Source: Perna viridis (Eukaryota). Taken from it: 64,000 nt of DNA. Under the pieces are notes generated by a model. It did no database searches and was not told where the DNA came from. It saw only the letters and a list, made by a program, of their open reading frames with translations. How positions within the stretch are numbered: position 1 is the first letter of the stretch; the number at the start of each line of letters is the position of its first letter. The stretch lies in NCBI GenBank assembly GCA_037379345.1, contig CM074515.1:20770001-20834000 (forward strand), in the 5' to 3' direction. Position numbers and translations under genes: made by a program. Below, piece by piece: positions 1-20,392 of this stretch.

Positions 1-450
1 AGGCACGTTGAACAAATCAGCTTTCATGGCGCAGATGAATAAATACACCATAACGATCCACGAGCTCATGATGACGGCCATAAAACTTCTGTAGTGATGA
101 CTTAAATCTTGTATTAAATTATCCTGTACCAGCAGCCTTATTGTAAGAGTCTAGCGCGATACACAAAGTCTGCAAGCTCTTGCATAACGTATGAGTCGTG
201 ATATGAAAACTGCCGAAAGGATGTGCCACAGATGAAAGGACAGTTGACAATACGGAACGAAAATGTAATCGCGTTTGTCGTATAGCTTGCATGGTCAAAA
301 GTTTTCCTTTACTATCAATCTCTGAGTGTAGGTCAAGATATGAGGCTGACTTCACAGTTTCTGTAGTATCCTTTATCTCTAGTTCTTTGGGATAGATGCC
401 ATGTGTCAAGTCCCCGAAACTAGAATTGTTTAACGATAATACGTCATCTA
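1..450 (-). pseudogene. Penelope-like (probably Naiad-type) retroelement reverse transcriptase, C-terminal half, degenerate
   Basis: Minus strand reads DDVLSLNNSSFGDLTHGIYPKELEIKDTTETVKSASYLDL, then after a frameshift LYDKRDYISFRIVNCPF, typical of PLE RT motifs 5-7 and thumb. It has stops and frameshifts and is contiguous with 19505-19775 once the insertion is removed. Confidence 0.85.
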
Positions 451-825
451 CAGTACCAATAATTTACCAACGTTTAACTAACACATTTCTATTTTGTACT
501 GAAACTGTACTGTTGTAATGACTATTGAAACAGTACTGTATTTTACAGTAATGTTACAGTACTGTTACTTACAGTACTGTTTCATCACTGTCATCTACAG
601 TACTGTGTCATTACTGAATTTTACAGTACTGTTCCATTACTGAATTTTACAGTACTGTTCCATTACTGAATTTTACAGTACTGTTTTATTACTGAAGTTT
701 ACAGTACTGTTCTATTACTGAATTTCACAGTATTGTTTCATTACTGAATTTTACAGTACTGTTCCATTGCTGAATTTTACAGTACATTTTCAGTACTGTG
801 TGTGTAACAGTATCGTTTCAGTAAG
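451..825 (+). repeat. Left TIR plus subterminal 26-bp tandem array (ACTGAATTTTACAGTACTGTTCCATT) with palindrome ACAGTACTGT
   Basis: Unit starts at 613, 639, 665 and onward (26-bp period); mirrored at the right end. Confidence 0.9.
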
Positions 826-929
826 TTACAATTTAGTAATATAAGTAATATAATTCACTAAGTTGTAGATCTACCAATGAAATGTGTATATATCTGACAT
901 ATCAAACACTGACATTACTGGCAATACCT

Positions 930-1228
930 CACATGGCCTATGGCAAGGTGTGCTAAAATTTTAACACTAATGTATACTCTGACATCGTGATCATCTGCAA
1001 AATCCCATATATTGCAGGTTGATTTTGACCCTGCAAACACATATTTTTTTTGCAAATATCCTCTTAAAGACAAGATAATAAATGGTTAATCATTTTAGAT
1101 TTCATCCCTCTACCACTTGAAATTGAAGCTATGGACTTAAACCAAGAACTTAACCAAGGTTTTACGTACACATGGACAAGGGGAAAACTATATGTCTGAC
1201 CCACTATCGTGAGCGGGCCATTACTAAC
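930..1228 (-). mobile_element. Helentron/HINE-like fragment
   Basis: GCTATGGACTTAAACCAAGAAC...GGACAAGGGGAAAACTATATGTC...CCACTATCGTG resembles the end of the copy at 2280-2606. Confidence 0.45.
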
Positions 1229-1494
1229 GAACAATTGCTACATCCCTCTCCAACTCTGTTAAAATTGGGAACTAGAAATCTGACAAAGTCTGGAAGGGCC
1301 CTGTTTGTAACCAATCTACGTTTTTTTTTCAATAATTCAACAAATTTACACAGAATTTTGATATGCGAACCCTCAAATGGTACTGAATCACTGTGTAAAA
1401 TTTCATATCTCAACTCCATGTACATTGATATAGTATTTGTCTCGTCTGCAAATGAGGAGTGAGACATACATGTACAACAATTTAGGTATCACTT

Positions 1495-1925
1495 TACCGG
1501 CGACGTTAACTTTTAGGTTAAAATTTTATGAGCACCTCCATATCTCAGAAATTATAAGTTCTAGGTTGATACGTATGCATATGCCCCAGTAGTAGCCCAG
1601 CACAGCTGCATCCCCATCGTTTGACCTTGACCTTGATTTTCCAGTTGAATGACAATCTTCAATGCATATAATAGCAAGGTTAAAGTTTTATGAGCACCTT
1701 CATATCTCAGGAACTAAAAATCATAGGTTAATGAAACATGGTATGCATACACCTTTACAGATTTAAGTTGGGTTTTGTGATGGCGCAGGCAGGCGAGACG
1801 TACTTTAGTGTTAACTCTTGTTTGAGTTTTAAGTGTTCACAAGAAACTGTGGACGGACAGGTAGACGGACAGACACAGTGAAAACTATAGGGCACCACAT
1901 TTTCAATGCTGGGCCCTAATAATAA
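1495..1925. mobile_element. HINE-like fragments with ~160-bp internal duplication and GACG/GACA microsatellite
   Basis: GGTTAAA(A/G)TTTTATGAGCACCT(C/T)CATATCTCAG occurs at ~1516 and ~1678; GGACGGACAGGTAGACGGACAGAC at ~1850. Confidence 0.4.
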
Positions 1926-2279
1926 AATAATCTGAACCATGTAGCTAAACTAAAAATGACTGACAGAATTATATGTAAAGAAGTGGCTTCGGTTTTTTTA
2001 CTCTCCCTTTCAGTCGTTTTCTGTTTGACATACTCTCCATTTCCATTTTTTTCTAAGTGTTGGTTGCGATTGCAAGCAGGTCACAGAAACCCCCTGCCGT
2101 CTATCATTTAGGGATTTGTTTTTTTTTAATTTCTATTTTTTCAATGTGTTTTTTATGCGGAAAGATGAAATGACAATGGAATAGTATTGAAGCAATAAAA
2201 TGTAATTGTAAAGAACCAACAAATCAAACACAATAACACAAACATGAGGCTCAAAAGTAGCTTACATTCTTAACTATCT

Positions 2280-2606
2280 AACTAGATAAAGCGCCTATCA
2301 GACACGGATGTCCCGCCTGTTACTGCAATCAATTTATAGGCATTAAAAATGATCTTATTCATGATAAGTGGTGATATGAACCGTAACCAACTTGACCAAA
2401 GTCGTTCACGCATAAAATGTAGGTCATAGTGACCTAATTCATACTGGGCCATGATTTACTACCCAAGACACATCTACTGACCAAATATCATTGATGTACC
2501 ACATGTAGTATCTGAGATATGGACCTTAACCAAAATGTTACAGACAGACTGACGGACAAGGGTAAATCTATATGTCCCTACCACATACGTGGACGAGACA
2601 TAAAAA
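2280..2606 (-). mobile_element. Helentron/HINE-like non-autonomous element
   Basis: AACTAG terminus, GACAGACTGACGGAC microsatellite, CCAC...GTGG hairpin and ATAAAAA terminus match HINE architecture in reverse. Confidence 0.55.
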
Positions 2607-2685
2607 TGAACTATTGTTATTAAATGTTGTACGGTACATGTAATTTGTCAGTTGTGACCTTTAACATATGTAAGGTTTCAAATTT

Positions 2686-3407
2686 TCAATTCTGGTTTTG
2701 TTTGGTCAAAGCCTCGACAAGCTGGACCACCAGCTGTATTTTTTTCTCTTCGGTCTCCATTTTGGCCTTATGTTGTTCCTTTATCATTCCTATTAAATTT
2801 TGCTGGTCATGTCTTACAGTTTGTAGGTGACTGAAAATATCTTCGTTGGTAGTTGTTTTCTTTTTCTTTTTCAGATGTGTAGACTCCTCTACATCAACCT
2901 CACTAAAAGATTCATCATTGCTGGTCATGCTAGTAGAGGGTTTAACATGTACCGATACACCGGATTTCACACTAGGAACAAACTCTTCGGAAGAGCTTGT
3001 TCCTAGGGTAAAAACATGTGTCACCTTTGGCCTATATCCATAGCAGCCTTCTAACTCTTGGACAAATGCACACTCTTTCTTGCGGTCCCTTCCACTTTTC
3101 CTGTTATGATCCACAACGTCACGATAGTTGTTTGTTAGGTTCTTCCACTTCTGCTCGCATTGAGCACCACTAAAATTGTGACCTTTGTTTGAGATCTGCT
3201 CTGAAATTTTTAACCAAATATCGTTTTTCTTAATTGACGGTTTTGCAAACATATGCTCATATTGTTTATGTAACTCTATGAGTTGTGATGTGGCTTCTTT
3301 CGACCACTTTGAATTTGGTGTGCTGCATGATACTGGTGATGAAGCATCAGATAATACAGATTCCACATAGGATAGGCTAGACATTTTCTGTACAGATCCA
3401 TTTTTGC
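2686..3407 (-). CDS. Myb/SANT-like (trihelix, Myb_DNA-bind_4-type) DNA-binding protein, last coding exon; C-terminal coiled coil
   Basis: Intact ORF with WSKEATSQLIELH...IWLKISEQI...FSGAQCEQKWKNLTNNYRDVVDHNRKSG...CAFVQELEGCYG (three conserved Trp), Ser-rich linker, KKKKK NLS-like run and coiled-coil tail. Acceptor TTTTTATTTTAG|GC at 3408-3409 makes the ORF-track start probably intronic. Confidence 0.85.
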
Positions 3408-3736
3408 CTAAAATAAAAATGTTCATGGTTATTTTAGCCAAAATCTTCAGAGATTTCCATTTACTAGTGGTTGCTCATGTTTATTTTTGTTGTTTGTGGT
3501 TTTTCATGTTCGTTTTCTTGTTTCTGTTTCATGGGATGATTTTTTTCGTACCCTTTCTTTGCTATCATAAATGCTATTTGTCAAAATCTGTGACTTACGA
3601 ATTCATGAAAGTTTTTATTATTGCATCAAGTGTTTAATCACATTTATTGGCCAAGGTACATGTTGTTGGCTTTATATGACTATAGATTAGATTGTGAATA
3701 GACAATCTTACTCTATTCGTTTACATGTACTGATTA

Positions 3737-4412
3737 CTGTGAATTCATTTATTTTCATGGATATTAATTTTCTTTAATTTATGAAAAAGTGTTTGTGGAT
3801 TGTTAAATTGTTGATGCTGGATTTGGCTTCCTTTTTCGAACATTTTACTGGATTTTAGTCTCTTTTTTTTTTAACTCTCCCAATATCTTTGATTTTGTGC
3901 CTACCAATTTTTCCGATTTTAAGGGGACGACCATTTGATTTTGAGGTGGAGGGCTTTGCAGTTTTAGTCGGGTCAGAATATTTATTTTTGAAATTCTTCA
4001 GGTCAGAAAAATCCACTTCATGACAAGATTATTCATTTTTATACCTCATACGACAGAACCTTGGGCAAGATCATTCATTTTATTTATTTTCTGGGTGGCT
4101 CATGTCAGAATATTTATTTTCATGGTTTTCAAGGCCAGAATATTTATTTAAAAAGACTGCCTGGCCCCCCTCTCAGAATCAAATGGTTGTCCCCTAATGC
4201 TTCTGAATAGATGTTACTAATGAAAATATGCATGTATGTATCCAGCATTTCAAAATTTACAGTTGTTTTTTGACATTTCGGTCATATTTGTTTTTCTGAA
4301 GTGTACGGCATACAAAGCAATGTTAAATTTCCTTTTCATGGGGTACTAAATTTCATGGGTGGAGTCATGGTGGACCTATCCTGATCCCCCACGAAAAATA
4401 ATGAAACCTCAG
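3737..4412. mobile_element. Degenerate TA-flanked MITE (Tc1/mariner-type ends) in the Myb gene intron
   Basis: TA-CTGTGAATTCATTTATTTTCATGG at the left and CCACGAAAAATAATGAAACCTCAG-TA at the right; imperfect inverted match. Confidence 0.4.
3923..4194. mobile_element. PIF/Harbinger (Tourist-like) MITE with TAA target duplication
   Basis: TIRs GGGGACGACCATTTGATTTTGAG / CTCAGAATCAAATGGTTGTCCCC; TAA at 3920-3922 and 4195-4197. Confidence 0.8.
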
Positions 4413-4458
4413 TAAATGCTTCTACTAAAGATTTTTGCTCTGATTTTTTTTATCTTAC

Positions 4459-4787
4459 CAGATTCACTAGGGATATCTGCACAGACGTATTCCTCGAATG
4501 CTGGACACCAGTCCAAAAGCGTGTTTAAACCCAGGGATTTATTACTTCAACTGCCTCCTTTCGGTCAGGTGTAAGATTACTCATAATTTTCTGATACACA
4601 GTGGTTGTGTTCTTTTTCGTTATTACTGGTATATCTGCCGCTCCTACTTTCTTGGTAAATGTTTGGGCGTTATTGATATTTGATGTAAGGTATGACTTCA
4701 GGATATCTGCATTGGTATACTGATGATACTTTACAGGTATAAGTGTACTGAGAGGGCCGATGGGTTCTCCCTCAATATACAGCGTTT
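4459..4787 (-). CDS. Upstream exon of the Myb/SANT gene, with an apparent 1-nt frameshift near 4538-4540
   Basis: Acceptor TTTTATATTTTAG at 4788-4789 and donor G|GTAAGA at 4457-4458. The 3' frame LGLNTLLDWCPAFEEYVCADIPSES-G joins in phase 1 with GC of the 3407 exon (G|GC = Gly). The exon is 329 nt, one short of 330. Confidence 0.6.
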
Positions 4788-5029
4788 CTAAAATATAAAA
4801 ATGAAATTTAATTAAAGGGTGTGTATGTACATGCAAGCCACAGATGTCCATTCGTTACCGCAACATTTTGTAAGTTAACCCATTACTAAAGGAACACCAT
4901 TGCCCTACATGAAATAAATCAAATAATTGATTTGGACTTGGTTGCATATCGAAGCATACGATTGATACATGATAGTTGCTGAGAAATCCACTGTGTACTA
5001 ACGGACAACGACAACGGTTGTTTCGTATT

Positions 5030-5039
5030 ACTTCCGGTT
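5030..5039 (-). promoter_or_regulatory. ETS-type motif (AACCGGAAGT) upstream of the Myb gene, possible promoter element
   Basis: ACTTCCGGTT on + in a locally CpG-richer patch ~240 bp upstream of the 4787 exon; motif only. Confidence 0.3.
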
Positions 5040-6632
5040 TTCGGGAACTTTAAGAAAATGATCAAAATTTTTTGCTAGCGACATAATAACTTGTGTATCA
5101 AAATCACCCAAAATATTGCTGAAATTGATTAAATTAAGATTTTGATTTCCCCTTTGATGGTCCTAATTTTCATTTTTTATAGACATTTTGAGAAATACAT
5201 ATTTGACTTTGTTATTTTTAAAATGTGACGTCACAATGTGTGTAACGTCATAAACTCCTTGACGTAAACCATGAAAGGAGTTCAGGAAAGAAAATAGAAA
5301 TATTTTTTTGTGAAACAGAAACCTGCTGAGATTGCTTTACTAACAGTTACCGAAAAATCAATAGACATTATATTGCTATGATGAGGAAAACATACTAGCA
5401 TTAAAACATCGGGAACAGAAAAATAACTCGCTTTTTTTAGCATATCATAAGATATACTCTGATATTTATATGCCAAAAAATACGGGTTGTACACACGGTC
5501 CAAGAATTTAAAGCTGTTTGCAGGAGTGATGTGTACGTAATTCAGCCACTTTTGTTATAAACAGAAGTACATCGTTTGGTGTTTTACTAATGACAATTGA
5601 CATGATTACACGAGTACCCACTTTGCATATAGGGGGTCAATAGACATGCCTTCTTACTATCGTCCTATTTCAATTTGTTCTTTGTATAGTTTCCAAAATT
5701 TTTTAGGGACATGTTTGTTCGTATCTCTATGCATACATAAGTATTTAAATGATTAAAAAACGAATACAGGGAGATCAGTCTGATTTAAGACTAGTCCATT
5801 CACATTGAACATACATGTTCCTGGTAATTGATGAATGGTTGAAATATATGAATAACATTTCAGCAAGGTTTTTGATCTCGTAAATCATTTTACACTTGTT
5901 GGATAAGCTGAAATTAAATGGTATAGAGAGTATCCTTTGGCCCGAGTGAGCTAAAAAGGGGTTACCTGCCTGCAAAACATCCTTTGGAGATTATCCAACC
6001 GTACGAATATCATAGCGTTTTATAAAGTGGAAATGGCTTGTCAAGCTTTCCTATAGATGATGTTGGAATTGTGATGTCGGCCTAGATTTCATGAATTTAT
6101 TGTTCCAACCAGATGATTACTAAAATTTCTGTCAATGAGATGCTTACACTCCAATGAAGAATTTGCCCCTCCAAAAAACGTGTTCCTTTTTCACATTCAG
6201 TGGTCGTTTTGTTATGTAACATTTCATTTTCAAGTTTGGTGCCTTTACGAGTAATTTACAGTTGGTTGTCCAGAAGTTGAAGAACGGTGGAATATATTAT
6301 TGCAGCGATAGGGCAGACCATTACACCAGCAAAAAAAGAAGAAAAAGATGAAATATAGGGATGCCATGAATGGTGACTATAGAAATGCTTATCCAAAGTA
6401 TTTTTATTCTTAAAAAGAAAATATTTATGTATGGCTATCTTTGAAACCAGGTGCAGTTCTAGGATTATATCTTGGGGTGTAGAAGCGACAAGATGTCGGA
6501 GTCCCAAGTGGGTCAAGAGCAAGGCCATGTTGAGGAACCTCCGTTTTGACGGTTTAAGCATTGGATATTGAAGTAGACAGACTTACTGGTCTTGAAATAC
6601 GATATCAAACAAGAAAAAAATTAGGTCTACAA

Positions 6633-6733
6633 CACGCTGGGTATCATAATGTTCACAACAAACCGGAGCATAAAATTGATTATAGCGCCGTCAAAAACAG
6701 CTCCAAGTTCAGTGTGTTATGATACTCAGCGTG
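6633..6733. mobile_element. 101-bp MITE with CAC termini and 5-bp TSD (Transib-like)
   Basis: TIRs CACGCTGGGTATCATAA / TTATGATACTCAGCGTG; TACAA at 6628-6632 and 6734-6738. Confidence 0.75.
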
Positions 6734-7779
6734 TACAAGTACTTTCATACAACTAAATACTGGCAGGGCATAATGTAAAATATATGTATATGAAAATGCA
6801 AGTCTCTTTTCGACTCTTCGCTCATCGATCAAATTAAGAGATCAAGGGACTCAGGGAATATTTCTAGAAAAGGTTACATCACAATTCAAGAAGTAAATAA
6901 TATTAGTTTGGGATGACAAGATTCCTCCCTCTAAATAAAGTATAATTCCGAATCCTGAACCAGATAATAGCATGGGTCTAACTTCGAATGAAAAATAGCT
7001 GCATCATATGTTAAGTTTAACAATAGGTACAGACCATTTTCTTTTTCTTGACATAGGGAGGGGGCTGCGATTTTATGTTTATATAGAAATATATCCGTGC
7101 AAGCGTGAAAATAATAACTTTTTTCCAACAGTTGCCGGATTTAAACATTTTTATTTGATAATTTACATTGTCAAGTAATGGAGGAATTATTAATATTATT
7201 CTTTTCAGGCCATGGATGAGTAAAAAAATAGCTCAAATTTGGATTATTTTTTTCAATCAATGACATGCTTTATATCAACCTTTATAAATATTCGCGTTTA
7301 GAAAGGAAAATCATACACAATTTGAAATAAGAAAGTAAATAAATACCATTGTTAGTTAAAGACATACATGTAGCAGTAACGTATAAAATGAGGTAGAATT
7401 GGGGAACACTGCAATAGCTGTTTTTCACTGTTTGTGTTCGGTTGATAGCTTTTTAAATTATTTATTTATTCTTTGCAGTATAAACATTTATCACACTGGC
7501 AGATAGTTTGCATTTCGGGACGAACATATTCATAAAAATAGAATAGCTTTATTCTACTCGGATTTTGTATGAGAATGATAGCTCACAGAATACTACTCCA
7601 TTACCACAGGAACTAAGGACCAGGATTTTTCCCTCTTAAAAATATCATTAAATCATTTTGTTTCCATATTTGAGTTATTATGTGTGTTCTCTGACATGTC
7701 CGTTTGCTATTTATTGCTGTTTATACTAGGCGGTTTGTATCCAGATGTTTCGGCCATTGTACAAGAGGAAAACAGATTA

Positions 7780-8420
7780 CCTATAGTCGGCGTCACATAA
7801 ATAACATACTGTTAAAATTTGAATAAAAATATTTTCTACGACTTTATTGACACCTACCGTCGTTTAAATTGTCTTAAATGACTTGCTCATTCGTTTAGCC
7901 AAACGGCTTCTCCCTAAACATTGAATCGTTAAATTCCGGTCAGATTTTAATTCTAGGTGGCAATATTTACATTGTAAAAAGTCGGCCATGTTTACAGTGA
8001 TCGGGTTGCTAGGAGATGTTGTTTACGTTTAAATGGTTTGTCCAAAAACCGAAGAACCCAGAATGCAATTCGGCGTTATTTCGGATATCTCGGATTTATT
8101 TTACGCGAACAACGTATAATACCGAGAAGTTGATCAAGCAGACGATTGTCACCGGAGTTCGACGGGAACTTACGCACTTCGTTTGTAAACAAATCGTCCC
8201 GTAAAAACCAACATGGCGGATATTAGTATGGGATTTTCCCGTAAGGATTTGTTACGCATGATTTAAGCTAATAAGCGACTTGTTTTTGAGAAGCTGTTTG
8301 GCTAAACGAATGAGCAAGTCATTTAAGACAATTTAAACGACGGTTGGTGTCAATAAAGTCGAAGAAAATATTTTTATTCAAATTTTAACAGTATGTTATT
8401 TATGTGACGCCGAGTATAGG
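7780..8420. mobile_element. MITE with ~130-bp TIRs
   Basis: 7780-7911 (CCTATAGTCGGCGTCACATAAATAAC...GCCAAACGGCTTCTC) is the near-perfect reverse complement of 8288-8420; TA/TATA at the ends. Confidence 0.85.
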
Positions 8421-8726
8421 CAATGATGATGATTTACTCATTGAGAGGTACTTGTAAGTAAGCAAAGACGATGTTATATATTAGCGGATTAAATGGGCGA
8501 AAAGAAGGTTCACACCCCTCGGGAAATCAATTACACATACTTTTTATTCATGTGTTTTTTTTTCCAAAAATTTTACCCCCACCGAAACATTCTAAGTCAC
8601 GATCTGCTTACCAAAAAATAATGTGACTAAACTAACACTAAGCCAAAAACATAATATCAGCCTATACGAAACTCGCACAGGATGAGAGCATGCATGGGGG
8701 AAGTGGAAAAAGAATGTCAGTAAATT

Positions 8727-9325
8727 AAGGGACAGTGACCAGACATGGAAAACAGACTAGCACCACAAAGAACATGAGGTAAAATAATACATTCAAAGTA
8801 ACAAAAGTAACAGAGCAATTCGGACACCACTAAAAACTGTGAACATGGACCAGGTGCACCGGTAGGGTAAGTGCCCTCTGCTTTTCTGGAAACACCCGCC
8901 GAGTTGATCGTTCACTCCTTGAGACGTTCACATTTCCTATTTAAGCGTTCGTGCATCGTTTATCGTGCGTTTACTCATAGTTTTGCGTTCGTTTATTTTT
9001 GTACTGTGATTATTTCCTTGATTTAACTCTTATTTTTATATTTTTGGCGATTTTTGATTTATATAATTTCATTAATTTTATTTTCTATTTTTTCTGTCTT
9101 CATTATATGTCAATATTATTATTTTTCCTCGTTCGTCTATCGTGCGTTTAAACGCACGCTGGGGCGTTCGTTTATCTGCGTTTAAACGCACGATAGAAGC
9201 GTTCGTTTATCGTGCGTTTTGGTGAGCGTTTAGCGTGTGTTTGGATATCGTGCGTGCGGGAAGCCTAAACGTCTCAAGGAGTGTAAAAGTCAAGTCCGAG
9301 GTACACAAAAGAGGAAAGGAAAACT
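8727..9325 (-). mobile_element. 3' end of the Penelope-like element, interrupted by a MITE
   Basis: Homologous to 51918-52130 (GGACCAGGTGCACCGGTAGGGTAAG...AACACCC(G/A)CCGAGTTG...AAAAGTCAAGTCCG), which continues into RT C-terminal coding sequence. Confidence 0.7.
8913..9283. mobile_element. CACT-ended (EnSpm-like) MITE with TTTATCGTGCGTTT subterminal repeats
   Basis: Perfect 16-bp TIR CACTCCTTGAGACGTT / AACGTCTCAAGGAGTG; the corresponding empty site is visible in the paralogous repeat at ~52085. Confidence 0.8.
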
Positions 9326-9355
9326 GACAGGTTAAAAAACAAATAAGTTTTTATG

Positions 9356-9471
9356 GCCCTTGTGTGAATCGGAAACTGGGTAATGCTCAGTGCTAACCGA
9401 CCATTTCATCTTTTAATGAAATGATCGGTTAGCAATGAACATTACCCAGTTTTCGATTCAGACACAGGGGC
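9356..9471. repeat. ~115-bp imperfect palindrome (hairpin MITE)
   Basis: GAATCGGAAACTGGGTAATGCTCAGTGCTAACCGACCATTTCAT pairs with ATGAAATGATCGGTTAGCAATGAACATTACCCAGTTTTCGATTC. Confidence 0.75.
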
Positions 9472-10920
9472 TCAACGTTACAATTGACTATATAAGTCAT
9501 ATACATTATCAGGGCCCCGATATCTATATATATCTTTTGCCAGTGGTTTCATTGGTTCCCTGGTCAACGACTTACTTCCTGGTAACCAGTTGTCAACACT
9601 TTAGAGGCATTTGGTACGGCATCTGAGCCTTGTCTAGTTCCGTAAAAAGTGCTATTTCTGAGAGTGACAATGCGTTTCCTTCGATTTCGAGTCCTGCTTT
9701 AAAGAGAGATAGCTAAGAGAAGAGCATTGTCAGGTCAACAAAGTGTTTGACGATCCTTTGAATGAATATAGTGTTAAAGAGATTGTAAGTTAGCATTAGG
9801 TGGAGGACAGGGACACCTACATTGTAATTGTAAGAAAGGTTGTAAAAGTGTTGAAAGTGTAAGTGCAAAAAAAAATGAAAGTGATGTATAATTCAAAGTG
9901 TCAAATGTCAACAACTTGTAGCAGTAAGTACAAAGGTAAATAAATCATGCATGTGTTTTGTAAATATACGTTTATCATTGTTCAGTCATTTATCATACAT
10001 AAAATTATAGTGTGATATCATCATATCCACCAAATCTATTTTTTTAAGTTTTACAAAATTAGGTGCACCAGGCATATCAAAATTTCGATTTTTCTTTTTT
10101 TTTACTGGTTAAAGTGTCGCTATTTAGTTTATGTTGTCCTGTATAAGATTGGATGTGTTGTATTTTCATTATTGACATACACGTTATTGTGTACTAACTT
10201 TCTACAACATATACGTCGAAATGTTGCTCTTCGTATTTCTGAAAAAAAAAAAGGGTTATCAAAATGATATACCTATAGCTACATATCCTTTGCAAAAGAT
10301 GATCATTTTGACAGACATCTTTGATTTTATGCGAATGTCGCAGTTTTGCTGAAATTGTTGAAAAAGTAATACAATTTGTGTTCACGATCCTGAACTTACT
10401 CCATTAATAATGCAAGCTGCTATACGTACATGTAACATATATCATCAATCATTTCTCTTAGTTGACAGTATGGCGGGGATGATGCAGCATTTCTTTAATA
10501 TATTTTAATATATCATTCATATTCAAGACAACAGAAACCACTTTAAAACTCCTTCAGTGCCATGATATTTTGCCTATACTTCCTTTGAGGGCCAATGATC
10601 GGTCAAGATGCTATTCACAAGAACACGGAACGTAGTACCTTGTTTCCGTATTGTTTTTCATTGTTGACGTCAAATGTTACTTACAGGTTTTTTCGAAATC
10701 ACCGCAACCATTTATTTTCAACTTAATTCAAAGTTTTTTTTAACTTGAGCTAATCGATTTAGCGGTGAGTCCAGAAAAACATGCAACGGTTGCGATGTTA
10801 TGTATTGGGTTAATTATGGCTCAGTAAATAGTAAATGCTAATTAACTAGATCAGGATTAAGATTAATGTTAACAGTTATATGCACAGACTTTCTTACGAC
10901 CATCTGTTGATTGATCCCAG

Positions 10921-11286
10921 TATCAGTGGCCGTTCATGTCAAAATAGGGATATTTCTATCGGCTTACTTTTAACAAGTACTGGCTTACTTTTCAAAAGTA
11001 TCGGCTTACTTGTTAAAAGTATCGGCATACTTATCAAAAGTAAGCCGATACAACAACTTTATGCTTAGTGAAAAAAGTAACGGCATACTTTTCAAAAGTA
11101 AGCCGATACTTTTGAAAAGTATGTCGTTACTTTTTTCACTATGCATAAAGTTTTTGTATCGGCTTACTTTTGAAAAGTATGCCGATACTTTTGATAAGTA
11201 TGCCGATACTTTTAACAAGTAAGCCGATACTTTTGAAAAGTAAGCCGATAGAAATATCCCTATTTTGACATGAACGGCCACTGATA
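10921..11286. mobile_element. Foldback-type MITE, almost entirely palindromic, with ~20-bp internal repeats
   Basis: TATCAGTGGCCGTTCATGTCAAAATAGGGATATTTCTATCGGCTTACTTTT and its exact reverse complement at 11236-11286; internal AAAAGTATCGGCTTACTTTT repeats; flanked by ATCCCAG(T/C)AT direct repeats. Confidence 0.88.
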
Positions 11287-11575
11287 TCCCAGCATCACAG
11301 GATTAAGATCTATAGTTTTATTTTGATAACATTTAATGACACTATCCCCAGTTGAACATTACACTGATTTAATTATCTGCTTTAGACAAGTAAATATTTT
11401 GGTTTGATTGAACTTAAGGAAGTTAGCCATTGGTTAGAGTTAGAATTTTTAATGTTTTATTTATAATTTGTGGGAGGACTTTTTGGGGTGTTATATTCTC
11501 TGTACGTTTTGTATCTTTAGTTAGCTTACCATCATGCTCCGCTCTTGTAACATCGAGCGTTACTTATGTTATTTT

Positions 11576-13164
11576 TAAAATATTGTACCATCTTTATAAC
11601 ATCATAATAAACGATATATTTAGAACAATGGATTAAGTACTTGAAATAGTGGAATAACCAGCTCCTATTATTATTTGGTTGACTTTTCCGGACTTATAAT
11701 TTAATAGTTGAACAACGTGTCCCCAGTTGTTTACATGGTGGAGAATTCCTAGTTGTTCACATGGTGGAGAATTTCTAGTCGTTTACATGGTGAAGAGTCC
11801 CTAGTTATTTACATGGAAAATTTAAAATCATGAATCCATGGGGTCCCTTTGCATTACCAGAAAGTTTTCTTTAATCTACACCACAGAGGCCACACGGACA
11901 AAATGATTAAACAAACCCTTCCAGTTCGGAATTTTCAGAAAACTCTAGAAATGTTTATAATTTATTGGACTCAAGATGCTTTGCAGTCTCCTAAATACAA
12001 AGATGTTTTGCTGAGGCTAACAAGTATGGATGTGTTTTCCATAAATGATTAAACTTTTACATGATCTTTGAAATTTCGGAAATAACCTGTTTCGGGAAGA
12101 TTGACAATGAAAATTCCAAAGCTATAATACCAGGAAAAACACTATAATTGGAGTCTGTGTCATGGTTCCTACTATTCTAAGTACTTTAATACTTCTTAAT
12201 TTGCATAAACAGAAGAATTGCGAATCCCGAATAATGGATTTCATCTGGCTGTATATCACAATGATGACTATATAATGTTTAGTGTAAACCTACGAAACAT
12301 CTTTAGTTTTTGGACTTATTCGAACTTGAGCAATTGTAATGAATAAGTAACATTTATTACCATAAGATAATGTTTATTCTCAATTATCGAACAAAAAAAA
12401 ATATTGTTCCATTTTGTTATGTCTTCAAAGATTATTTTGTAATGTCTTTATATGTTGTATAGTTTTAGTTTGTTTTTGATATACATGTGTTTGTTGTAGT
12501 TTTAACAAAAGAAATAAGGTCTTGTTTCGATTTTATCAGATGGTATATATTTTTTTTTTAACTTTTCAAATCTTTTTAACCTGTTTTTTTATTTTATGAA
12601 ACGCAAAGGTTATAATTCCTGGAAAGTTTATGATGGGATGTAACTTGTGTAGCATGTTTGATGTTTGGAATGCATTTGCCATGGGTTGCAAATTGTGAAG
12701 GTATGGATACTTACTTGTTATGTTGTAATTGGATACTTTTTGTACCAAGTTTTTTTTTTTATGAACTGCAATGGTAACAATGTGTTGATCCATTACACAT
12801 AATTGTTTGAAGTTTGAATAGTGAAATGGTCATGTTGTTAAATATTACATTTTCCGGTATTATATGCTAGAAATTATACATTATGAGAATTAACTATTTT
12901 GTTCATTATGTTGTGTGTGTGTATTGAATCTTTGTTTATCTGTACTGCAGCCCTGGGTAAACAGTGTGAATGTGCTTTGTGTAACTGGAATAAAGAATTT
13001 CGAATTTCGTTATTTGTAAAATATTGTACCATCTTTATAACATCATAATTAACGATATATTTAGAACAATGAAATAGTGGAATGCCCAGCTCCTATTTAT
13101 TATTTGGTTGACTTTTCCGGACTTATAATTTAATCGTTGAACAACGTGTCCCCAGTTGTTTACA
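11576..13164 (+). repeat. ~155-bp direct repeats (11576-11735 and 13017-13164) flanking 1.3 kb, plus a ~26-bp tandem at 11720-11815
   Basis: TAAAATATTGTACCATCTTTATAACATCATAAT...GAACAACGTGTCCCCAGTTGTTTACA is present twice. Confidence 0.8.
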
Positions 13165-13968
13165 GCGAAACATGACTGAAGAGAGAGGGTGGAAATCCAG
13201 TGATTTTCTGTAATAACTTCGAATTTTGAGCATTTTAACAGGACACCATCCCTAGTTGGATCAGCCTATTATATATAGTTTAGTATTTATCATCCTAATG
13301 TTTGCCAAAATAATTGAAAATGAGGTGACGTCAATGTGCTGATGACGTTACAAATATTGTGACGTCGCATAACAGTAGGACAACCGGAAGCCCCTGCGTA
13401 GGAAAATATCTAATCATAGGTGGTTTCTGGGGAAGCCAGTATGGCGGCGTTTTTTTTTTCAGGAAAATTTTGGGACCCACCTTTTTCCAAATTCCCAGAC
13501 TATTACTGCTTAAATAAATAATCGGATCAGCCTGCTATAATATCATAACATGGTCCATCAGAGAGCCACGACTAAGTCAGTATAAACTCAGTAGCATATG
13601 AATAATCTTTTATTATCTGATAAAAATTGCGTGCCAAAAATTAGTTTTTTTTTTATTTGGCAAAAATTGAAGCGACGAACTTTCGTGACTCTCGTAAGGA
13701 GTACTCGCGATGAAATCTGATTTCAAAGATTTTAATGAGCTCATAATCCCTTAAATCCCTGAGGTAACATTTTTTTGTACCTAATTTGAAATATCATTTT
13801 TTTTACGAAAATATACAGGATTTTGGGACCGCCATGTAAGTTACATTTATTTTCACCATCTTGTATGAATTACAATGTACTTCCCTTAAATGTTGTCATA
13901 ATGTCAATGACTGTTAGTATCTTCCTCATGGAATTAAATAACTTGATTGCACTGAGTATGTCAGTTTT

Positions 13969-14137
13969 CAGTGGCGGATCCAAAGTGTAAGGTAAGGGGG
14001 AGGGGAGGAGGGGCAAAAAATATCTATTGACAGGATCACCGGTGATGTTCATGAAGTAAGAGTTTTTCATGACAAAAACACAATTTTTCAACAATTTTTT
14101 TTTCTAAGGGGGCCCGGGCCCCCTGGATCCACCACTG
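13969..14137. mobile_element. MITE with CAGTGG termini and 5-bp TSD
   Basis: CAGTGGCGGATCCA / TGGATCCACCACTG; GTTTT at 13964-13968 and 14138-14142. Confidence 0.75.
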
Positions 14138-14361
14138 GTTTTGGGTGCAAGTATTCAGCTTATGGTAAATATTTTAATGCATTGCATGAATTTGGATTGC
14201 AACTACACAAATTTTACACGAGTAGTGTATACATGTACATGTCAGGGGCCGCACTGGGCTTCGCCAATGTCGCAATTAGCGATTTTTAATTTTATTGCGA
14301 CAAAAATAACCGTTGGCGATTTTCTTGGCGCCTAGGTTTTGTATATTAAAATTGATGGGAT

Positions 14362-14879
14362 GTTTGTTTGTTTGTTGGGGTTTAACGTCCGAGCAGCAAT
14401 ATTTCAGCTATATTCAGACGATGAACATGAAATTGATGATAAAATGAATATGAAATGATGATGGAATGAAAAAGGGGTGGGACACAAGGACAATCGGGTC
14501 GACAAATTTTGATTGCAAATGGAAATAGGGAGAGGTGGGTAGGGTCGGGCAATTTAGCCTCCTGTGGTGGAGCCCTATGGTTCCCACTCCGGGAGAATAC
14601 CACAGTAGGGTTCTTTAACGTGCGAGGAACGTGGCATCTTTCCCAACACGGTGCACCACTATGGTTTGCGGTCAGGTTTTCCGTATTATAGCCTGACAAC
14701 CCCAGCATGTAACACGCCAGGGGTACCCCATTCCACCACCTGGGGCACACATCCCAGTTGCTCTGTGGGCAGAACGCCCTAGCCCCCGGCTAAGGTTCTG
14801 AGCACTATTTAGTCGCCTTTTACGACAAGCTTAGCGCTGCTGCAAGCTTATTCCTTTAACACCCGGACCTGCACGGGGC
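14362..14879 (-). mobile_element. Non-autonomous non-LTR (SINE-like) element with (CAAA)n tail and highly structured 5' end
   Basis: GC-rich island in AT-rich DNA. Minus-strand 3' end is GGACGTTAAACCCCAACAAACAAACAAAC. Degenerate ~18-bp TSD (14348-14365 vs 14880-14897). Confidence 0.7.
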
Positions 14880-17800
14880 AAAATTGGCAGGAAGTTTATA
14901 AGCAACCGATATTCTCTCTAATTAAACAATTGTGTAGACACCTGGTCAGAGATAATTGACTATGACCAATATTAATTTACGATTATAAAGGCAATTAATT
15001 GTAATTAGATCAGGCGACCGTGACTGACAATATGGGAGGTGTCAATCAAATGTAGATATATTATTGAGCCAATCAAAACTCTCATCATCTGGTCAAAGGT
15101 GAACGCAATTAAGGCCATGTGCACGTGGCTACACACAATTTTCACAGCCCTATTTAATCATGTAATACATTCAGAAACAGACTTACTTAATAACAGAATG
15201 AATTAAATCCAATTAACAATGATTATTCCATCAGGAAGTGTCTAAATACTTAGAAATGAAAGAATTGATACAAGAAAATGGATGACATTTGTTTACACTT
15301 TTGCCATGTGACTTTTTTGGCGGGAAACCTGGTAAACAAATAGAATGGGGGTTCCCAAAATCAAATTAAGGAAATACTATTCAGATATCAAGATAATTAA
15401 ACAGGGACACAATTAATGGTCCATGCTACAAAATGTAGCTCGATAGAAATTTTGTCACTTGAAAAAAAAAAAGAATCACGTTTTTAAAAATGTAATAATA
15501 AAAAATAATAAATTATATTGTATTAGATAAATTAGACATGTATTTGTAGACAATAAACAGATTTATTTACACGAGTAAAAGTTTGTCAAACAGGGCTTAA
15601 TGTTAGTGTTAATGCATTGATAAAATTTTACCAATATTGTACATGTACATGATATGTTTCCTTTACTCTCACATTTTGAAGTTGATTTGGTTGCATTTTC
15701 CTTTGATCTTTCCAACTTAAGCCAAATCTTACACATCTGCATCTTGAAAGGTTGACAGCCCAGCTGCCCAGGGTTTTAAAAATTTGTTTATAAATTTTTA
15801 TATCCGTCTTTTCAGGTAGAAGGATACAGTCTCTTGGAATGCCAGTTATCAACTTATCATGCCTGAAATGGTTATACATCTGTCAAACCTTTATTTTTAA
15901 TACGAACTGTATTGGTTTGCAGTGTAGATGCTATTTTGAGTATGAAATTCACAGCACACGGAATGTTATTGACCAGTTTGTTTTTGTTAGTTTGTTTATT
16001 TTATGTTTAATCTAATTTTTCTCTTCATACTAATCAGTTCTGCATGCATTGTTTGAAAGTGGGTCATACAGTGGCAAAATTACAAAACTATATTTTATTG
16101 ATTAATCCTTTTTTTTTTGTAAGATATTTCTTCATATTTTTCACCATACTGAAATATAGAAGGCTATGAAAGGAAGAAAAGGCTAATATGTATTTTCTTT
16201 AATGTGCCCCTCTTAAACCTTGCTAGCAAGTTATATACATGTACAACTAAGGCGCCATATCCTATTTGAGAGATAAAAGGTTTTGGATAACAGCTGCAAT
16301 TAACAATTTAACAACTGGATTTTTTCCATCCTTAGGTCTTCCTCTAACTACTATATATCTCATTGATAGTTATTTTTTTTATTTTTCTCAATGATTATCT
16401 CAACTTCTGTGACCTTTTATTACAAATTAAAAGTTGTGAGAATAAATGCACAGCACAAACATTTACACATCTTTACACAATTATTATTATATGATAAGGG
16501 GAAACGTGACTGACATTGTACTGCATCATTAGTTCCTCTTATAAAATGAAATTTACATGTACATGTTGGTGAAATTCCACATCTAAAACCTTTTTTTCTA
16601 ATAGTTTTCCTAGCAAAATTAAATACATATTGTGTTTGATTAACTGAAAGATTTAAAAATTTCGGTAATATAATAATTAAATACGTAATCTTTGTCTGAA
16701 CAACTAGAAAGTTTTTTTTACCACAAAGTTGTTCATAATAGTATACAAGTACTGGTATAACATGTATGTACAAGTTTGCAACTGATAGATTTTAGTGGGG
16801 TGCATGATAAATTTACATATGAGCTCTGCTTTTTGTTCTAATATATTGACATACAAGTACATTTACAGCTCATGTTTATAATGTCAACTTGAATTTAGGC
16901 CCTCAATATAGTTACTGCAACTGAATTAGTATGAGAATAGTATAATAATGTGACCTTTTTAAGATTTTAATACAAAAATTTGATATTGAAAAAAAATCTG
17001 TCATACATGTACAGGTACTGTCATTTATAAGTCTGCATCAAGGTCTTTCATCGCCCTTTGTCTTTGCTAAGTTCCATGTTGATTGAGGCATGTACATGTA
17101 TACCTACATGTAACTCATGGAATATGTTTCTTTCATTTGATATTAGCATTTCTATGTTTCCTAAAATTTGTTGTATCCCTGAAAAAAAGTAAAAAATTTA
17201 CTTATCACATGAAATATGTTATTAAAAACTACATGTACATGCATACCAAGCCTTTGCCAAACGGTTAAGTTTTGAGTATGTAGCAGGAAGAATAATAAAT
17301 AAGCCTATTTTAAAGTTCTTTTTAATAAATTATCATGATTACAAGGAATGTAAAACAGATATCTATATTGAGAGTGCTTTAGTATGCACACCTTTCAATG
17401 CAATATGTTAAATTTGGCTTAATTCCATCTACACTTCTTAAAACTACAATGTTCAATAACCTTTTATATGACTATATGTACTACATGTATATAAATTTAA
17501 ACTAAAATGCAAAGTGTTTGATGAATTACTGTCATATACATTGTAAGGGTCTGGCATATTTTGACAACTTATTTAAATTTAATTTTCCCATAAAGAAAGA
17601 ATAGTGATATAGGATTTGATCATTAATAACAAATAAAAGCAAACCTCCCAACATAAAAAAGTGCAGAGGTTGGTTATCATCCCTATACAAAGAGATGAAA
17701 TGGGGGGGGGGGGGAGGGGGGTCATGATAGTGAGAATCATGTTTGTCTACAGCCAAAACCTTGTATTCTTTAAATAACTAGAGCAGATATATCATTCAAC

Positions 17801-19024
17801 AATAGTTTGTTGGCTCTCTCACACAGCCTTTCATGGTGGAGTGCCTTTCTCTGGTTTTTGTTTGAACTTTAAAAAGCATGCTTAGTTAGTTCACGAACAT
17901 AGGTATTAGGATGGCATTTGGAATGATCAACAACTAAAACTATTTTACATACTGAGGTGTGCAGCATGTATGAGTGTGTTTCACCAGTACAGTAAAAGAT
18001 TTGATTTTTTTCTATGCAAGTTTTGGAAATACAATTAACAAAAATGAATACAAAAAGGTGCAAAACATGAAAATATTTACAAGTAATTGTAAACAATACT
18101 ACGTACTGCATGACACATGCATGGACTGATGAGAATATTCCTACCTACTTGTCGGAGCAATTTTGTCATAACTCAGACTAGAAACAACGCATACTGTGTC
18201 TATTTAACAAATTCCAAAATACCGATTAGACTGTAGATCTGCATACTGGAAAAGTCGTTTGATGCGTCAACATTCGAGTAACACCAAACACATGCCATTT
18301 CAATCGCGTGTAATTTAAAAGTAAAATCAGACAGCGATCGAGCCAGTTTTGGGGCCATAAATATTCAACTACAATGCTTTTTAATATACTTTCTAATGAC
18401 GTCATTGTAGATTTAAAAGTAGTTTTTTAAGTTTTAAATTGTCCAATAGAGTGCCAACGAGAAGCATCAAACCGATATTTAAAATTTCATAGGAAAATCT
18501 ACCAAAAAATACAACCCTCATTTAAAATTAGATATGTTTTTTTGTTCAACCGGGACTCCCATTCGGACTTATACGAAAATGTAGCCAGAATTTCAGTTTT
18601 GATATTGCCAACTTTCAAGAAAATCCAGTTTTTGTACCTAATTCGCGTAAATTATTTTCTGATCATGTGGTTAAGTGTCTGAATTTTTTGCACGAAAAAA
18701 AATTAATTAATCGTAGGTTGTTTTTTTAAAAGAAAAGTAGAAAGACTACTTTCAAAAGATCTAAATTTTCCATGGCGAAAACATCATAGCTTTCCGTCAA
18801 TTGGATGCAACACAGTAATGACTTAAACATGACATAGTCATTTTCAACGTCATTTTCCGAACGGCCAATACACTCGAAATAGTCCAAACGTCGCGGAAGG
18901 ACACAGACTAGGACGGATCACATTTTTGGTCTAAAATGCACTTCCGGTTGTCCTACTGTAAGACAACAAAGTCAAACATGTATTTTTCAAAATGTCCATG
19001 CTATCCTCAAGGTAGACCAGCTGT

Positions 19025-19504
19025 TCATAGTAAACATTACTGTAATTATACTGGAAAAATGTAGTACTGAAACAATACTGTAAAACACAATACTGAAAAC
19101 TTACTGAAACATACAGTACTGAAAATGTACTGTTTAACACAGTACAGAAAATGCGTTGTAAAAGCCAGTACTGAAAACGTACTGTAAACTTCAGTAAAGA
19201 AACAGTACCGGGAAATTCAGTAATGGAACAGTACTTTAAAATTCAGTATTGAAACAGTACTGTAAATGACAGTAATGGAACAGTACTGTAAAATTCAGTA
19301 ATGAAACAGTACTGTAAAGGACAGTAATGAAACAGTATTGTAAAATTCAGTAATGATACTGTACTGTAAATAACATTACTGTAAAAACACTACTTTAACG
19401 TCAATGTAAATTGCAGTACTGTTTCAGTAGTCATTACAACAGTACAGTTTCAGTACAAAATAGTAATGTGTTAGTTTAGCGTTGGTAAATTATTATTGTA
19501 AGTG
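19025..19504 (-). repeat. Right subterminal 26-bp array plus TIR of the 19-kb element
   Basis: Repeats of CAGTAATG(G/A)AACAGTACTGTAAAATT, the reverse complement of the left array. Confidence 0.9.
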
Positions 19505-19775
19505 TATATAGCGGAAACTGAGATAAACGGATGTAGCTTAACGATGTTCTTTCTTTCGGATCAGATCAGCTGTAATGACATCATTATAAGAGTGTAGGAA
19601 TAGGTCAGCAAGTAGAGAAGCAAAATTTGTTCACATCGGAATGCCGACCGTTTGTTGAAATCGCTTCCACCACAATGGACAAATATTTTATCGACATAAA
19701 ATTCGAGCATTTTGAAAACATCTTCTGTATATTTGGAAGAGGATTTGGAAATATTTTTTACAATGAATATGAAAT
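19505..19775 (-). pseudogene. Penelope-like RT, N-terminal continuation of 1-450 (5'-truncated)
   Basis: Minus strand KYTEDVFKMLEFYVDKIFVHCGG / FQQTVGIPM*TNFASLLADLFLHSY ... SVYLSFRYI, i.e. PLE RT motifs 4-5. Confidence 0.85.
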
Positions 19776-20392
19776 TCACGTATTTCATTCATTCCGGCAT
19801 CATAAGAAGAGATTTCAGCTAAGCACCTTGCAATGTGGTTTCAACAATGCCCTTTGGCCCTTGCGTTGTTGTATCAGACGACAAAATAAAAGATTTTGTA
19901 AAATCTATCCAAACGTCTTTATCGAAACGTCACAGTTGAATATGCTGTGACGTCGTCATAACGTTGAATTTGAATGTATACAGCCTCCATACGACAGGTA
20001 AGGATAATACAAAATATCGCATATAAAAAAGACGTAGCAAAGGGTAAAAAAAAAAGACAAAAAAGGGGGATCCGGAGGGTATACTCCTTTCTGTGGAGGT
20101 TCAGGTGTAGCTGAGCCCATACTTGTTTTGATTCTTAAGTTTTTGCGATAATCTGGCTAGTGTTACCATTTTAATTCAGTGCTGCATGATCAAGTCATTC
20201 CGTCAAAACTTTCTGCAAACATATATAGACTCTGTAACTCTGTAGCTCTGTAAATCTTGAACGAGCCTCGCGTTTTACCCCGATTCGAAGCCTCACCCAT
20301 ATGTTGTTTTTATTTCTAGTCAATATACAGTTATTTTCTTTATACTGCAATCCTTATCATTTTTAAATCAAGTTATATTTTTATACGACGTG

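What the first reader, a model, noticed from the sequence alone, without database searches (positions are those of the whole stretch)
451..19504. A 19-kb cargo-carrying TIR transposon whose ends are fixed by insertion into the YIDD motif of a retroelement RT
Seen: long imperfect TIRs, mirrored 26-bp subterminal arrays and a TA duplication; the two flanks rejoin into FRYI|DD of one Penelope-like RT. The whole 19 kb is therefore one insertion, later enlarged by nested elements. Known: CAC/CAG termini, 2-bp TSDs and subterminal tandem arrays are traits of animal CMC-EnSpm elements, while Myb/SANT partner genes are classically PIF/Harbinger (3-bp TAA/TTA TSD). Inference: this mixed combination with no visible transposase may be an undescribed large non-autonomous family or subgroup that moves a DNA-binding gene.
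Basis: partly seen in the sequence, partly recalled or inferred. Interest (0 to 1): 0.82.

Follow-up and report, generated by a model that had tools for sequence, protein, structure and literature searches.

The report
Old non-autonomous transposon stuffed with nested repeats
This 19-kb stretch is one old, immobile copy of a low-copy cut-and-paste DNA transposon that landed in a retroelement's reverse-transcriptase gene and was later swollen by other repeats; its "cargo" DNA-binding gene is a broken leftover of a different transposon found in this copy only, so the finding is largely ordinary.

Summary
Positions 451-19504 are bounded by ~110-nt inverted repeats (90% complementary), mirrored 26-bp arrays and a TA duplication. 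The two flanks are contiguous, with exactly 2 nt of overlap, in four other copies of the same retroelement.

The ends define a real family: 34 termini in the 723-Mb genome, paired copies from 1.5 to 19 kb, and TA next to 24 of 30 ends. No copy I read encodes a transposase. About 6 kb of the window copy is family sequence. The rest is later additions, three of them clean nested elements with their own target duplications.

The Myb/SANT gene lies in a 4.26-kb segment that:
- exists only in this copy and is single-copy in the genome;
- has no terminal repeats and replaces 18 bp of family sequence;
- carries a gene with no first exon, a frameshift and no partner transposase.

Its relatives, in this genome and in Mytilus, sit beside Harbinger (DDE_Tnp_4) transposase genes. 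It is therefore a dead Harbinger fragment, not cargo that the family moves.

The CAC...GTG termini, 2-bp duplication and subterminal arrays match published animal CACTA (CMC-EnSpm) elements. The superfamily remains inferred, because I found no autonomous partner.

The parts
449..450 (.). Left copy of the TA target-site duplication
   Evidence: The 2-nt overlap of the two flanks in four paralogous empty sites confirms it.
451..566 (+). Left terminal inverted repeat. The terminus reads CAGTACC here; the family form is CACTACC.
534..798 (+). Left subterminal array: 10.2 units of 26 bp, each with the palindrome ACAGTACTGT. Presumed transposase-binding sites.
451..915 (+). Left end region shared with all other family copies
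916..5178 (-). Copy-specific 4.26-kb segment. It is single-copy in the genome, has no terminal repeats and replaces 18 bp of family sequence. It is a fragment of a Harbinger-type element.
2686..3441 (-). Open 251-aa frame with a Myb_DNA-bind_4 domain: the last exon of a Harbinger Myb-like partner gene.
   Evidence: Pfam E = 2e-14. It is 44% identical to Mytilus protein P0001.
4442..4803 (-). Upstream exon of the same gene, broken by a frameshift near 4528. No first exon lies between it and the segment border.
5179..7607 (.). Non-coding family core, shared with up to 8 other copies
7776..8424 (.). Inverted-repeat pair (137-nt arms, 96% complementary), MITE-like, inside a stretch that varies between copies
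8415..10795 (.). Further family core, in blocks 8415-8626, 8707-8909, 9409-10007 and 10060-10795
10796..13164 (.). Nested 2.37-kb element with TGT...ACA ends and a 4-bp duplication GCGA. Seven other copies show the empty site.
10921..11286 (.). Foldback MITE (180-nt arms, 93% complementary) with duplication TCCCAG, nested inside the 2.37-kb element
13165..13372 (.). Family core block shared with 8 copies
13373..18958 (.). Nested 5.59-kb non-autonomous element with 18-nt terminal repeats (CAGTAGGACAACCGGAAG) and a TAA duplication, Harbinger-like. It holds a SINE-like repeat at 14379-14879.
   Evidence: No Pfam hit on its ORFs.
19056..19370 (-). Right subterminal array: 12.1 units of 26 bp, mirrored
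19386..19504 (-). Right terminal inverted repeat. The terminus is degraded: read inward it is CACTTACAATAATAATTTACC.
19505..19506 (.). Right copy of the TA target-site duplication
1..448 (-). Downstream half of the interrupted retroelement reverse-transcriptase gene (DDVLSLNN... onward), itself decayed
19507..20400 (-). Upstream half of the same reverse-transcriptase gene (...GIPM.TNFASLLADLFL...LSFRYI), with stop codons

Best explanation
The stretch is a single old copy of a low-copy, non-autonomous cut-and-paste DNA transposon family.

The family has 5'-CACTAC...GTAGTG-3' termini, inverted ends of roughly 110-270 nt, and 10-12 subterminal 26-bp units carrying the palindrome ACAGTACTGT. These units are presumably the docking sites for a transposase supplied in trans. 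The family duplicates a TA on insertion.

This copy inserted at a TA inside the YIDD codons of a retroelement's reverse-transcriptase gene. It then stopped moving and both termini mutated. It grew from a core of about 6 kb to 19 kb by later additions:
- a 2.4-kb TGT...ACA element that itself holds a foldback MITE;
- a 5.6-kb TAA-duplicating Harbinger-like element that holds a SINE-like repeat;
- a MITE-like inverted repeat;
- a 4.26-kb fragment of a Harbinger element.

That last fragment most likely entered by break repair, or was trimmed by deletions after it entered. It carries a truncated, frameshifted Myb-like partner gene.

Shown here: the boundaries, the duplication, the family, the nesting, and the origin and uniqueness of the Myb piece.

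Inferred: that the family belongs to the animal CACTA (CMC-EnSpm) group (about 0.55), that the arrays bind the transposase, and how the Myb fragment got in.
For: Boundaries and duplication.

Family:
- 34 termini against 0 in the control.
- TA beside 24 of 30 ends.
- Ten paired copies of 1.5-19 kb: nine fetched and read, and the C7 copy fetched.
- At the pairs where both termini can be read, the flanks are TA/TA in five (window, C8, C2, C3, C7) and TA/TG in one (C6).

Core against additions: only 451-915, 5179-7607, blocks within 8415-10795, 13165-13372 and 18959-19504 recur in other copies. The 4.5-kb C6 copy is shared throughout. Clean empty sites in other copies give duplications GCGA and TAA for two nested elements.

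No transposase:
- No frame over 160 aa and no Pfam hit in the copies.
- No tblastn trace of a Harbinger or EnSpm transposase in the copies.

Myb piece:
- Single-copy and without terminal repeats.
- It replaces 18 bp that seven other copies keep.
- First exon missing and a frameshift present.
- 9 of 10 paralog loci lie 0.8-2.4 kb from a DDE_Tnp_4 frame.
- The Mytilus homolog lies beside a 382-aa DDE_Tnp_4 gene, both enclosed by a 41-nt inverted repeat.

Superfamily: animal CACTA elements are reported with invariant CAC...GTG ends and 2-bp duplications (PMC6004678, PMC1636069, PMC4298943).
Against: No autonomous copy was found, so the superfamily rests on end structure alone.

The genome's five Transposase_21 hits are nowhere near family ends. 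The one I examined, on C11, has neither the palindrome nor detectable inverted repeats within 18 kb.

A strict TA target is the hallmark of Tc1/mariner. It is also known in fungal Harbinger-like and EnSpm-like lineages (PMC12730594).

Five unpaired ends have interiors that match none of the fetched paired copies, and I could read only 1.6 kb into each. A coding copy could hide there.

The 251-aa Myb frame is still open, which leaves some room for function.

The route by which the Myb fragment entered is inferred, not shown.
Confidence: 0.8

Rival explanations
1. One reading: an undescribed large family or subgroup that combines CMC-like ends with a Harbinger-like Myb partner gene and moves that gene as cargo.
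For: The Myb domain is real and its last exon is an open 251-aa frame. Everything between the paired ends would move together if the element were mobilised. Plant CACTA elements are known to capture gene fragments (my own knowledge, not checked here).
Against: The segment is in no other copy and is single-copy in the genome. The nearest protein paralogs are only 39-40% identical. The gene lacks its first exon and has a frameshift. Both termini of this copy are mutated. Nothing shows that it ever moved with the segment.
Confidence: 0.06
2. The window copy is a relic of the family's autonomous ancestor, a Harbinger-related element with TA duplications. The Myb gene would then be native, and all other copies would descend from one internal-deletion derivative.
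For: The segment sits where the other copies share one uniform junction. An 8-nt ATAGACAT motif occurs at that junction. In another copy (C1:16.06 Mb) a Harbinger transposase exon lies within 10 bp of the same site. TA-duplicating Harbinger relatives exist in fungi (PMC12730594).
Against: The transposase exon in the C1 copy belongs to a separate 1.8-kb element with its own terminal repeats. That element is also found at two unrelated loci whose flanks differ from each other and from C1. The window copy lacks 18 bp of family sequence that the other copies, including the C1 copy, retain next to the left end, so it is derived rather than ancestral. No transposase remnant lies beside the Myb gene. 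No first exon is present. Harbinger terminal repeats usually start with A or G (PMC4482050), whereas these start with C.
Confidence: 0.07
3. The structural reading is the same, but the family is mobilised by a Tc1/mariner/pogo-type transposase rather than a CMC-type one.
For: The target and duplication are strictly TA. The genome holds many intact Tc1-like transposase frames (89 DDE_3 hits). Some Tc1-like elements have long inverted repeats with several binding sites (my own knowledge).
Against: The family terminus is CACTAC, not the CAGT or ACAGG forms usual in this superfamily (my own knowledge). Arrays of 10-12 subterminal repeats are typical of CACTA elements rather than Tc1/mariner. None of the 89 DDE_3 loci lies within 40 kb of a family end. 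I did not search for pogo or mariner profiles.
Confidence: 0.22

Closest known systems
Animal CACTA / CMC-EnSpm elements and their non-autonomous derivatives (SmTRC1, ENS1_Cis, CMC-NA MITEs)
   Same: 5'-CAC...GTG-3' termini (here the full CACTA pentamer), a 2-bp target-site duplication, subterminal repeats, and large non-coding derivatives (PMC6004678, PMC1636069, PMC4298943).
   Different: No Transposase_21-type gene was found in any copy or near any end. The duplication is almost always TA, a preference the papers I read do not report for animal CACTA elements. SmTRC1-type elements start with CCC rather than CAC.
Maize En/Spm and other plant CACTA elements
   Same: CACTA termini and many short subterminal repeats in both orientations, which in maize bind the element's own protein (my own knowledge).
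   Different: Plant elements make 3-bp duplications. The host here is a bivalve. No element-encoded proteins were found.
Tc1/mariner/pogo elements
   Same: TA target and TA duplication.
   Different: The terminal sequence and the 10-12-unit subterminal arrays are atypical. No such transposase lies in or near any copy.
PIF/Harbinger elements (transposase plus Myb/SANT partner gene)
   Same: The Myb gene inside this copy is of that kind. A second nested element, at 13373-18958, has the TAA duplication of this superfamily.
   Different: The 19-kb element itself makes a 2-bp duplication and starts with C. The Harbinger-type parts are later additions to this copy, not parts of the family.
ESTA and PHISTA, fungal EnSpm-like and Harbinger-like lineages with TA duplications (PMC12730594)
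   Same: They show that TA duplications occur outside Tc1/mariner, in both the CMC-related and the Harbinger-related clades.
   Different: They are fungal, autonomous, and carry TET/JBP genes. No sequence relation was tested or is known.

Membership tests
CMC-EnSpm (animal CACTA) | Transposase with a CMC-type DDE domain (Pfam Transposase_21 for EnSpm) | tested here: inconclusive
   None in 12 copies. This is expected for non-autonomous copies. The genome's 5 Transposase_21 hits are not near family ends, and the C11 locus lacks the family's motifs.
CMC-EnSpm (animal CACTA) | Termini 5'-CAC(TA)...(TA)GTG-3' | tested here: met
   The family terminus is CACTACC...GGTAGTG in 11 exact and 23 near-exact ends.
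CMC-EnSpm (animal CACTA) | Target-site duplication of 2-3 bp (2 bp in animals) | tested here: met
   2-bp overlap at four paralogous empty sites. TA flanks 24 of 30 ends.
CMC-EnSpm (animal CACTA) | Subterminal repeat arrays | tested here: met
   26-bp arrays at both ends. The motif recurs at other copies' ends.
Tc1/mariner/pogo | TA target-site duplication | tested here: met
Tc1/mariner/pogo | DD(E/D) transposase of this superfamily within full-length copies | tested here: inconclusive
   None in the copies. None of 89 DDE_3 loci is near a family end. Pogo and mariner profiles were not searched.
PIF/Harbinger | 3-bp TWA duplication | tested here: not met
   The duplication is 2 bp, TA.
PIF/Harbinger | DDE_Tnp_4 transposase and Myb/SANT partner gene native to the element | tested here: not met
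   The Myb piece is copy-specific and truncated. The transposase exon in the C1 copy belongs to a nested element with its own terminal repeats.
Gene-capturing ('Pack'-type) transposon | Captured host or foreign gene piece carried between the ends and moved with them (found in more than one insertion) | tested here: not met
   The segment is single-copy in the genome.
Penelope-like retroelement (the interrupted host element) | Penelope-type reverse transcriptase with a GIY-YIG endonuclease | tested here: inconclusive
   Pfam gave no hit on five pieces of the protein. By eye I saw no GIY-YIG-like motif after the C-terminus in two copies. The N-terminal region was not examined. The YIDD box and multi-copy status are confirmed.

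The most novel reading that the evidence does not exclude
The ends belong to a TA-specific lineage with CACTA termini in bivalves whose transposase is not of any profile searched here. It could be an animal counterpart of the fungal TA-duplicating EnSpm-like elements, or something new. The Myb-bearing fragment would then be a rare animal example of a CACTA-type element picking up foreign DNA by repair synthesis.
Probability: 0.12. Interest if true: 0.5.

Novelty: new member of a known kind. Interest (0 to 1): 0.25.

Why it matters
It matters little beyond annotation. The case is a clean, well-bounded example of how a modest non-autonomous transposon becomes a 19-kb composite through nesting. 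It also shows how such composites can mimic a "cargo-carrying" or "hybrid" element.

The family itself has TA-specific insertion, CACTA termini, a palindrome-bearing 26-bp array and no known transposase. It is worth a library entry and could help define animal CACTA diversity in molluscs if its autonomous partner is found.

The paralogous empty sites give an exact proof of the duplication length.

Tried and rejected
Autonomous partner:
- I paired all 34 termini and read ten paired copies in full, plus 1.6 kb inside every other end. No transposase turned up.
Smaller requests passed.

A false lead: a Harbinger transposase exon 750 bp inside the C1:16.06 Mb copy looked like the missing native gene. 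I rejected it. The same 1.8-kb unit, with its own terminal repeats, lies at two unrelated loci, and in the C1 copy the family sequence resumes right after its 3' repeat.

EnSpm route:
- The genome has only 5 Transposase_21 hits.
- 18 kb around the best open one (C11) showed no inverted repeats and no CAGTACTG motif.
- Its protein finds nothing in the family copies.

Tc1 route: none of 89 DDE_3 loci is near an end.

Terminal repeats for the Myb segment: a local alignment of its two ends scored no better than shuffles.

Identity of the flanking reverse transcriptase: Pfam gave nothing and the protein atlas returned only unnamed clusters.

Full report
**Observation**

The window comes from chromosome-scale contig C5 of a 723-Mb genome. 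The only taxonomic hint is that the closest protein matches are from Mytilus mussels.

- Inverted terminal arms 458-566 and 19386-19494 are 109 nt and 90% complementary. By eye they reach the termini at 451 and 19504.
- Just inside them lie mirrored tandem arrays of a 26-bp unit: 534-798 with 10.2 copies and 19056-19370 with 12.1 copies. The unit contains the palindrome ACAGTACTGT.
- TA precedes 451 and follows 19504.
- On the minus strand the right flank ends in ...LSFRYI. The left flank, read two bases in from the junction, begins DDVLSLNN. Removing one TA restores FRYIDD in frame.

Instead I aligned each flank separately to other copies of the same retroelement that I had already fetched. 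In four of them the two flanks are adjacent with exactly two bases of overlap. That is a direct demonstration of a single insertion with a 2-bp TA duplication.

**The family**

The 110-nt left end finds 40 full or near-full matches elsewhere in the genome. A 34-nt terminus pattern with up to three mismatches finds 34 sites, against none for the reversed control.

The family terminus is CACTACC...GGTAGTG. The window copy has CAGTACC on the left and a degraded right terminus. TA flanks 24 of 30 distinct ends.

Ends pair into copies of 1.5, 2.6, 2.7, 4.5, 5.4, 7.5, 8.1, 9.4, 13.6, 14.1 and 19 kb. Where both termini of a pair can be read, the flanks are TA/TA in five cases and TA/TG in one.

The two-palindrome array pattern occurs 537 times against 4 for its control. 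The listed places are almost all at family ends.

**What is family sequence and what is not**

All-against-all comparison of the copies shows which parts of the window copy recur elsewhere. They add up to about 6 kb:
- 451-915
- 5179-7607
- blocks within 8415-10795
- 13165-13372
- 18959-19504

The 4.5-kb C6 copy consists entirely of shared sequence.

No copy has a frame longer than about 160 codons, and none of those I scanned hits a transposase family. The family as sampled is non-autonomous, with a long non-coding core.

**The additions**

Other copies provide clean empty sites for two of them:
- 10796-13164 has TGT...ACA ends and a GCGA duplication. It contains a foldback MITE at 10921-11286 with its own TCCCAG duplication.
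- 13373-18958 has 18-nt terminal repeats and a TAA duplication, so it is Harbinger-like and non-coding. It contains a SINE-like repeat at 14379-14879 that also occurs independently in other loci.

A MITE-like inverted-repeat pair lies at 7776-8424.

**The Myb/SANT 'cargo'**

The 251-aa frame at 2686-3441 (minus strand) has a Myb_DNA-bind_4 domain. Its relatives are Harbinger partner genes:
- Its best database match is a 359-aa Mytilus protein at 44% identity.
- In Mytilus that gene lies 2.7 kb from a convergent 382-aa DDE_Tnp_4 gene, and a 41-nt inverted repeat encloses both.
- In the present genome the protein has ten paralog loci at 33-41% identity where scored. Nine of them lie 0.8-2.4 kb from a DDE_Tnp_4 frame.

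In the window, however, the gene is a remnant:
- There is no DDE_Tnp_4 trace anywhere in the window.
- The upstream exon (4803-4442) changes frame near 4528. The Mytilus gene has one continuous exon there.
- No first exon lies in the 375 bp between that exon and the segment border.

The 4.26-kb segment that holds it (916-5178):
- is absent from all other copies;
- is single-copy in the genome apart from short interspersed repeats;
- has no terminal repeats, since its ends align no better than shuffles;
- replaces 18 bp of family sequence that seven other copies retain.

I conclude that it is an internal fragment of a Harbinger element. It was either captured during break repair or inserted whole and then trimmed at both ends. 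Nothing indicates that the family ever moved it.

I searched the Myb exons separately and never joined them. No letters were put at the frameshift.

**A lead that failed**

A tblastn search with the Mytilus Harbinger transposase hit one family copy (C1:16.06 Mb). The hit lay 750 bp inside the left end and within 10 bp of the position where the window copy holds its Myb segment. This briefly suggested a Harbinger-type autonomous ancestor.

Further sequence showed otherwise. The exon belongs to a separate 1.8-kb element with its own terminal repeats (GGCTGTTTTCACTTGTAACTC). That element is present at two other loci whose flanks differ from each other and from C1. In the C1 copy the family sequence resumes immediately after its 3' repeat. 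It is a nested element.

**Superfamily**

With no transposase, the assignment rests on end structure. Published animal CACTA elements share invariant CAC...GTG ends and 2-bp duplications (PMC6004678, PMC1636069, PMC4298943). The wider CMC group makes 2-4-bp duplications (PMC4482050). The full CACTA pentamer and the subterminal arrays fit that group best.

Against this:
- The genome has only five Transposase_21 hits, none near a family end.
- The one I examined shares nothing with the family.

A strict TA target also fits Tc1/mariner. None of 89 DDE_3 loci is near an end, and the terminus is atypical for that superfamily.

Among Harbinger relatives, ISL2EU makes AT duplications and canonical Harbingers make TWA (PMC4482050). 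TA-duplicating Harbinger-like and EnSpm-like lineages are so far described in fungi (PMC12730594).

My estimates are CMC-like about 0.55, Tc1/mariner-like about 0.22, and the remainder other or unknown.

**How it works**

Shown here:
- insertion at a TA with a 2-bp duplication;
- trans-dependence, since no coding capacity is present;
- later growth by nesting.

Inferred:
- The roughly 20 palindrome-bearing units at the two ends are transposase-binding sites, as in plant CACTA elements.
- This copy is now immobile, because both termini are mutated.

**What could not be done**

- I had no comparison with Repbase/Dfam, so I cannot say whether the family is already catalogued.
- The 'Penelope-like' label for the interrupted reverse transcriptase is unconfirmed.

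**Verdict**

The interpretation as a cargo-carrying hybrid family is not supported. This is an ordinary, if nicely bounded, nested-transposon composite belonging to a probably CACTA-like non-autonomous family.

Noticed in passing
L013:2153-2680 (C1:16.06 Mb); L046:1500-3298 (C9:29.17 Mb); L045 (C5:19.62 Mb): A separate Harbinger-type family with terminal repeats GGCTGTTTTCACTTGTAACTC. The 1.8-kb deletion derivatives keep only the first transposase exon (HTH_Tnp_4-like). The C9 copy has a TGT duplication rather than TWA. A longer copy on C5 keeps exons of the DDE domain.
   Followed up: partly
G000 C11:35.80 Mb, C15:16.98 Mb, C15:11.57 Mb, C1:9.52 Mb, C13:34.13 Mb: A Harbinger family with apparently intact paired genes (a Myb-like frame of about 247 aa and a DDE_Tnp_4 frame of 397-399 aa, convergent, about 2 kb apart) in several near-identical-scoring copies. 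It may still be active.
   Followed up: no
L034 and L035 (C9:26,385,005-26,388,149 and 26,403,514-26,406,480): Two family copies about 16 kb apart whose flanks are reverse complements of each other. This is an inverted segmental duplication that includes the transposon.
   Followed up: no
window 60459-61796 (+): A 445-aa open frame with transmembrane stretches and a TVGYGD pore signature. It looks like an exon of a potassium channel of the small-conductance calcium-activated type. This was judged by eye only.
   Followed up: no
window 1-448 and 19507-20400; L038:4371-5779; fragments in L013+L044, L045 and L019/L020: The interrupted retroelement is abundant. Fragments of it are nested in several copies of the transposon family and around the Harbinger loci. 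Its protein ends ...QKFYGRHHELVDRYG, and I saw no endonuclease-like motif after that point by eye.
   Followed up: partly
window 14379-14879: A SINE-like repeat of about 500 bp, found independently in the C1 and C12 copies and in three other fetched loci at 78-91% identity.
   Followed up: partly
window 913-916 / 5179-5190 and the equivalent site in L013: Two unrelated Harbinger-derived pieces lie within 10 bp of the same position of the family sequence in two different copies, next to an ATAGACAT motif. This may be coincidence or a local hot spot. It is unexplained.
   Followed up: partly
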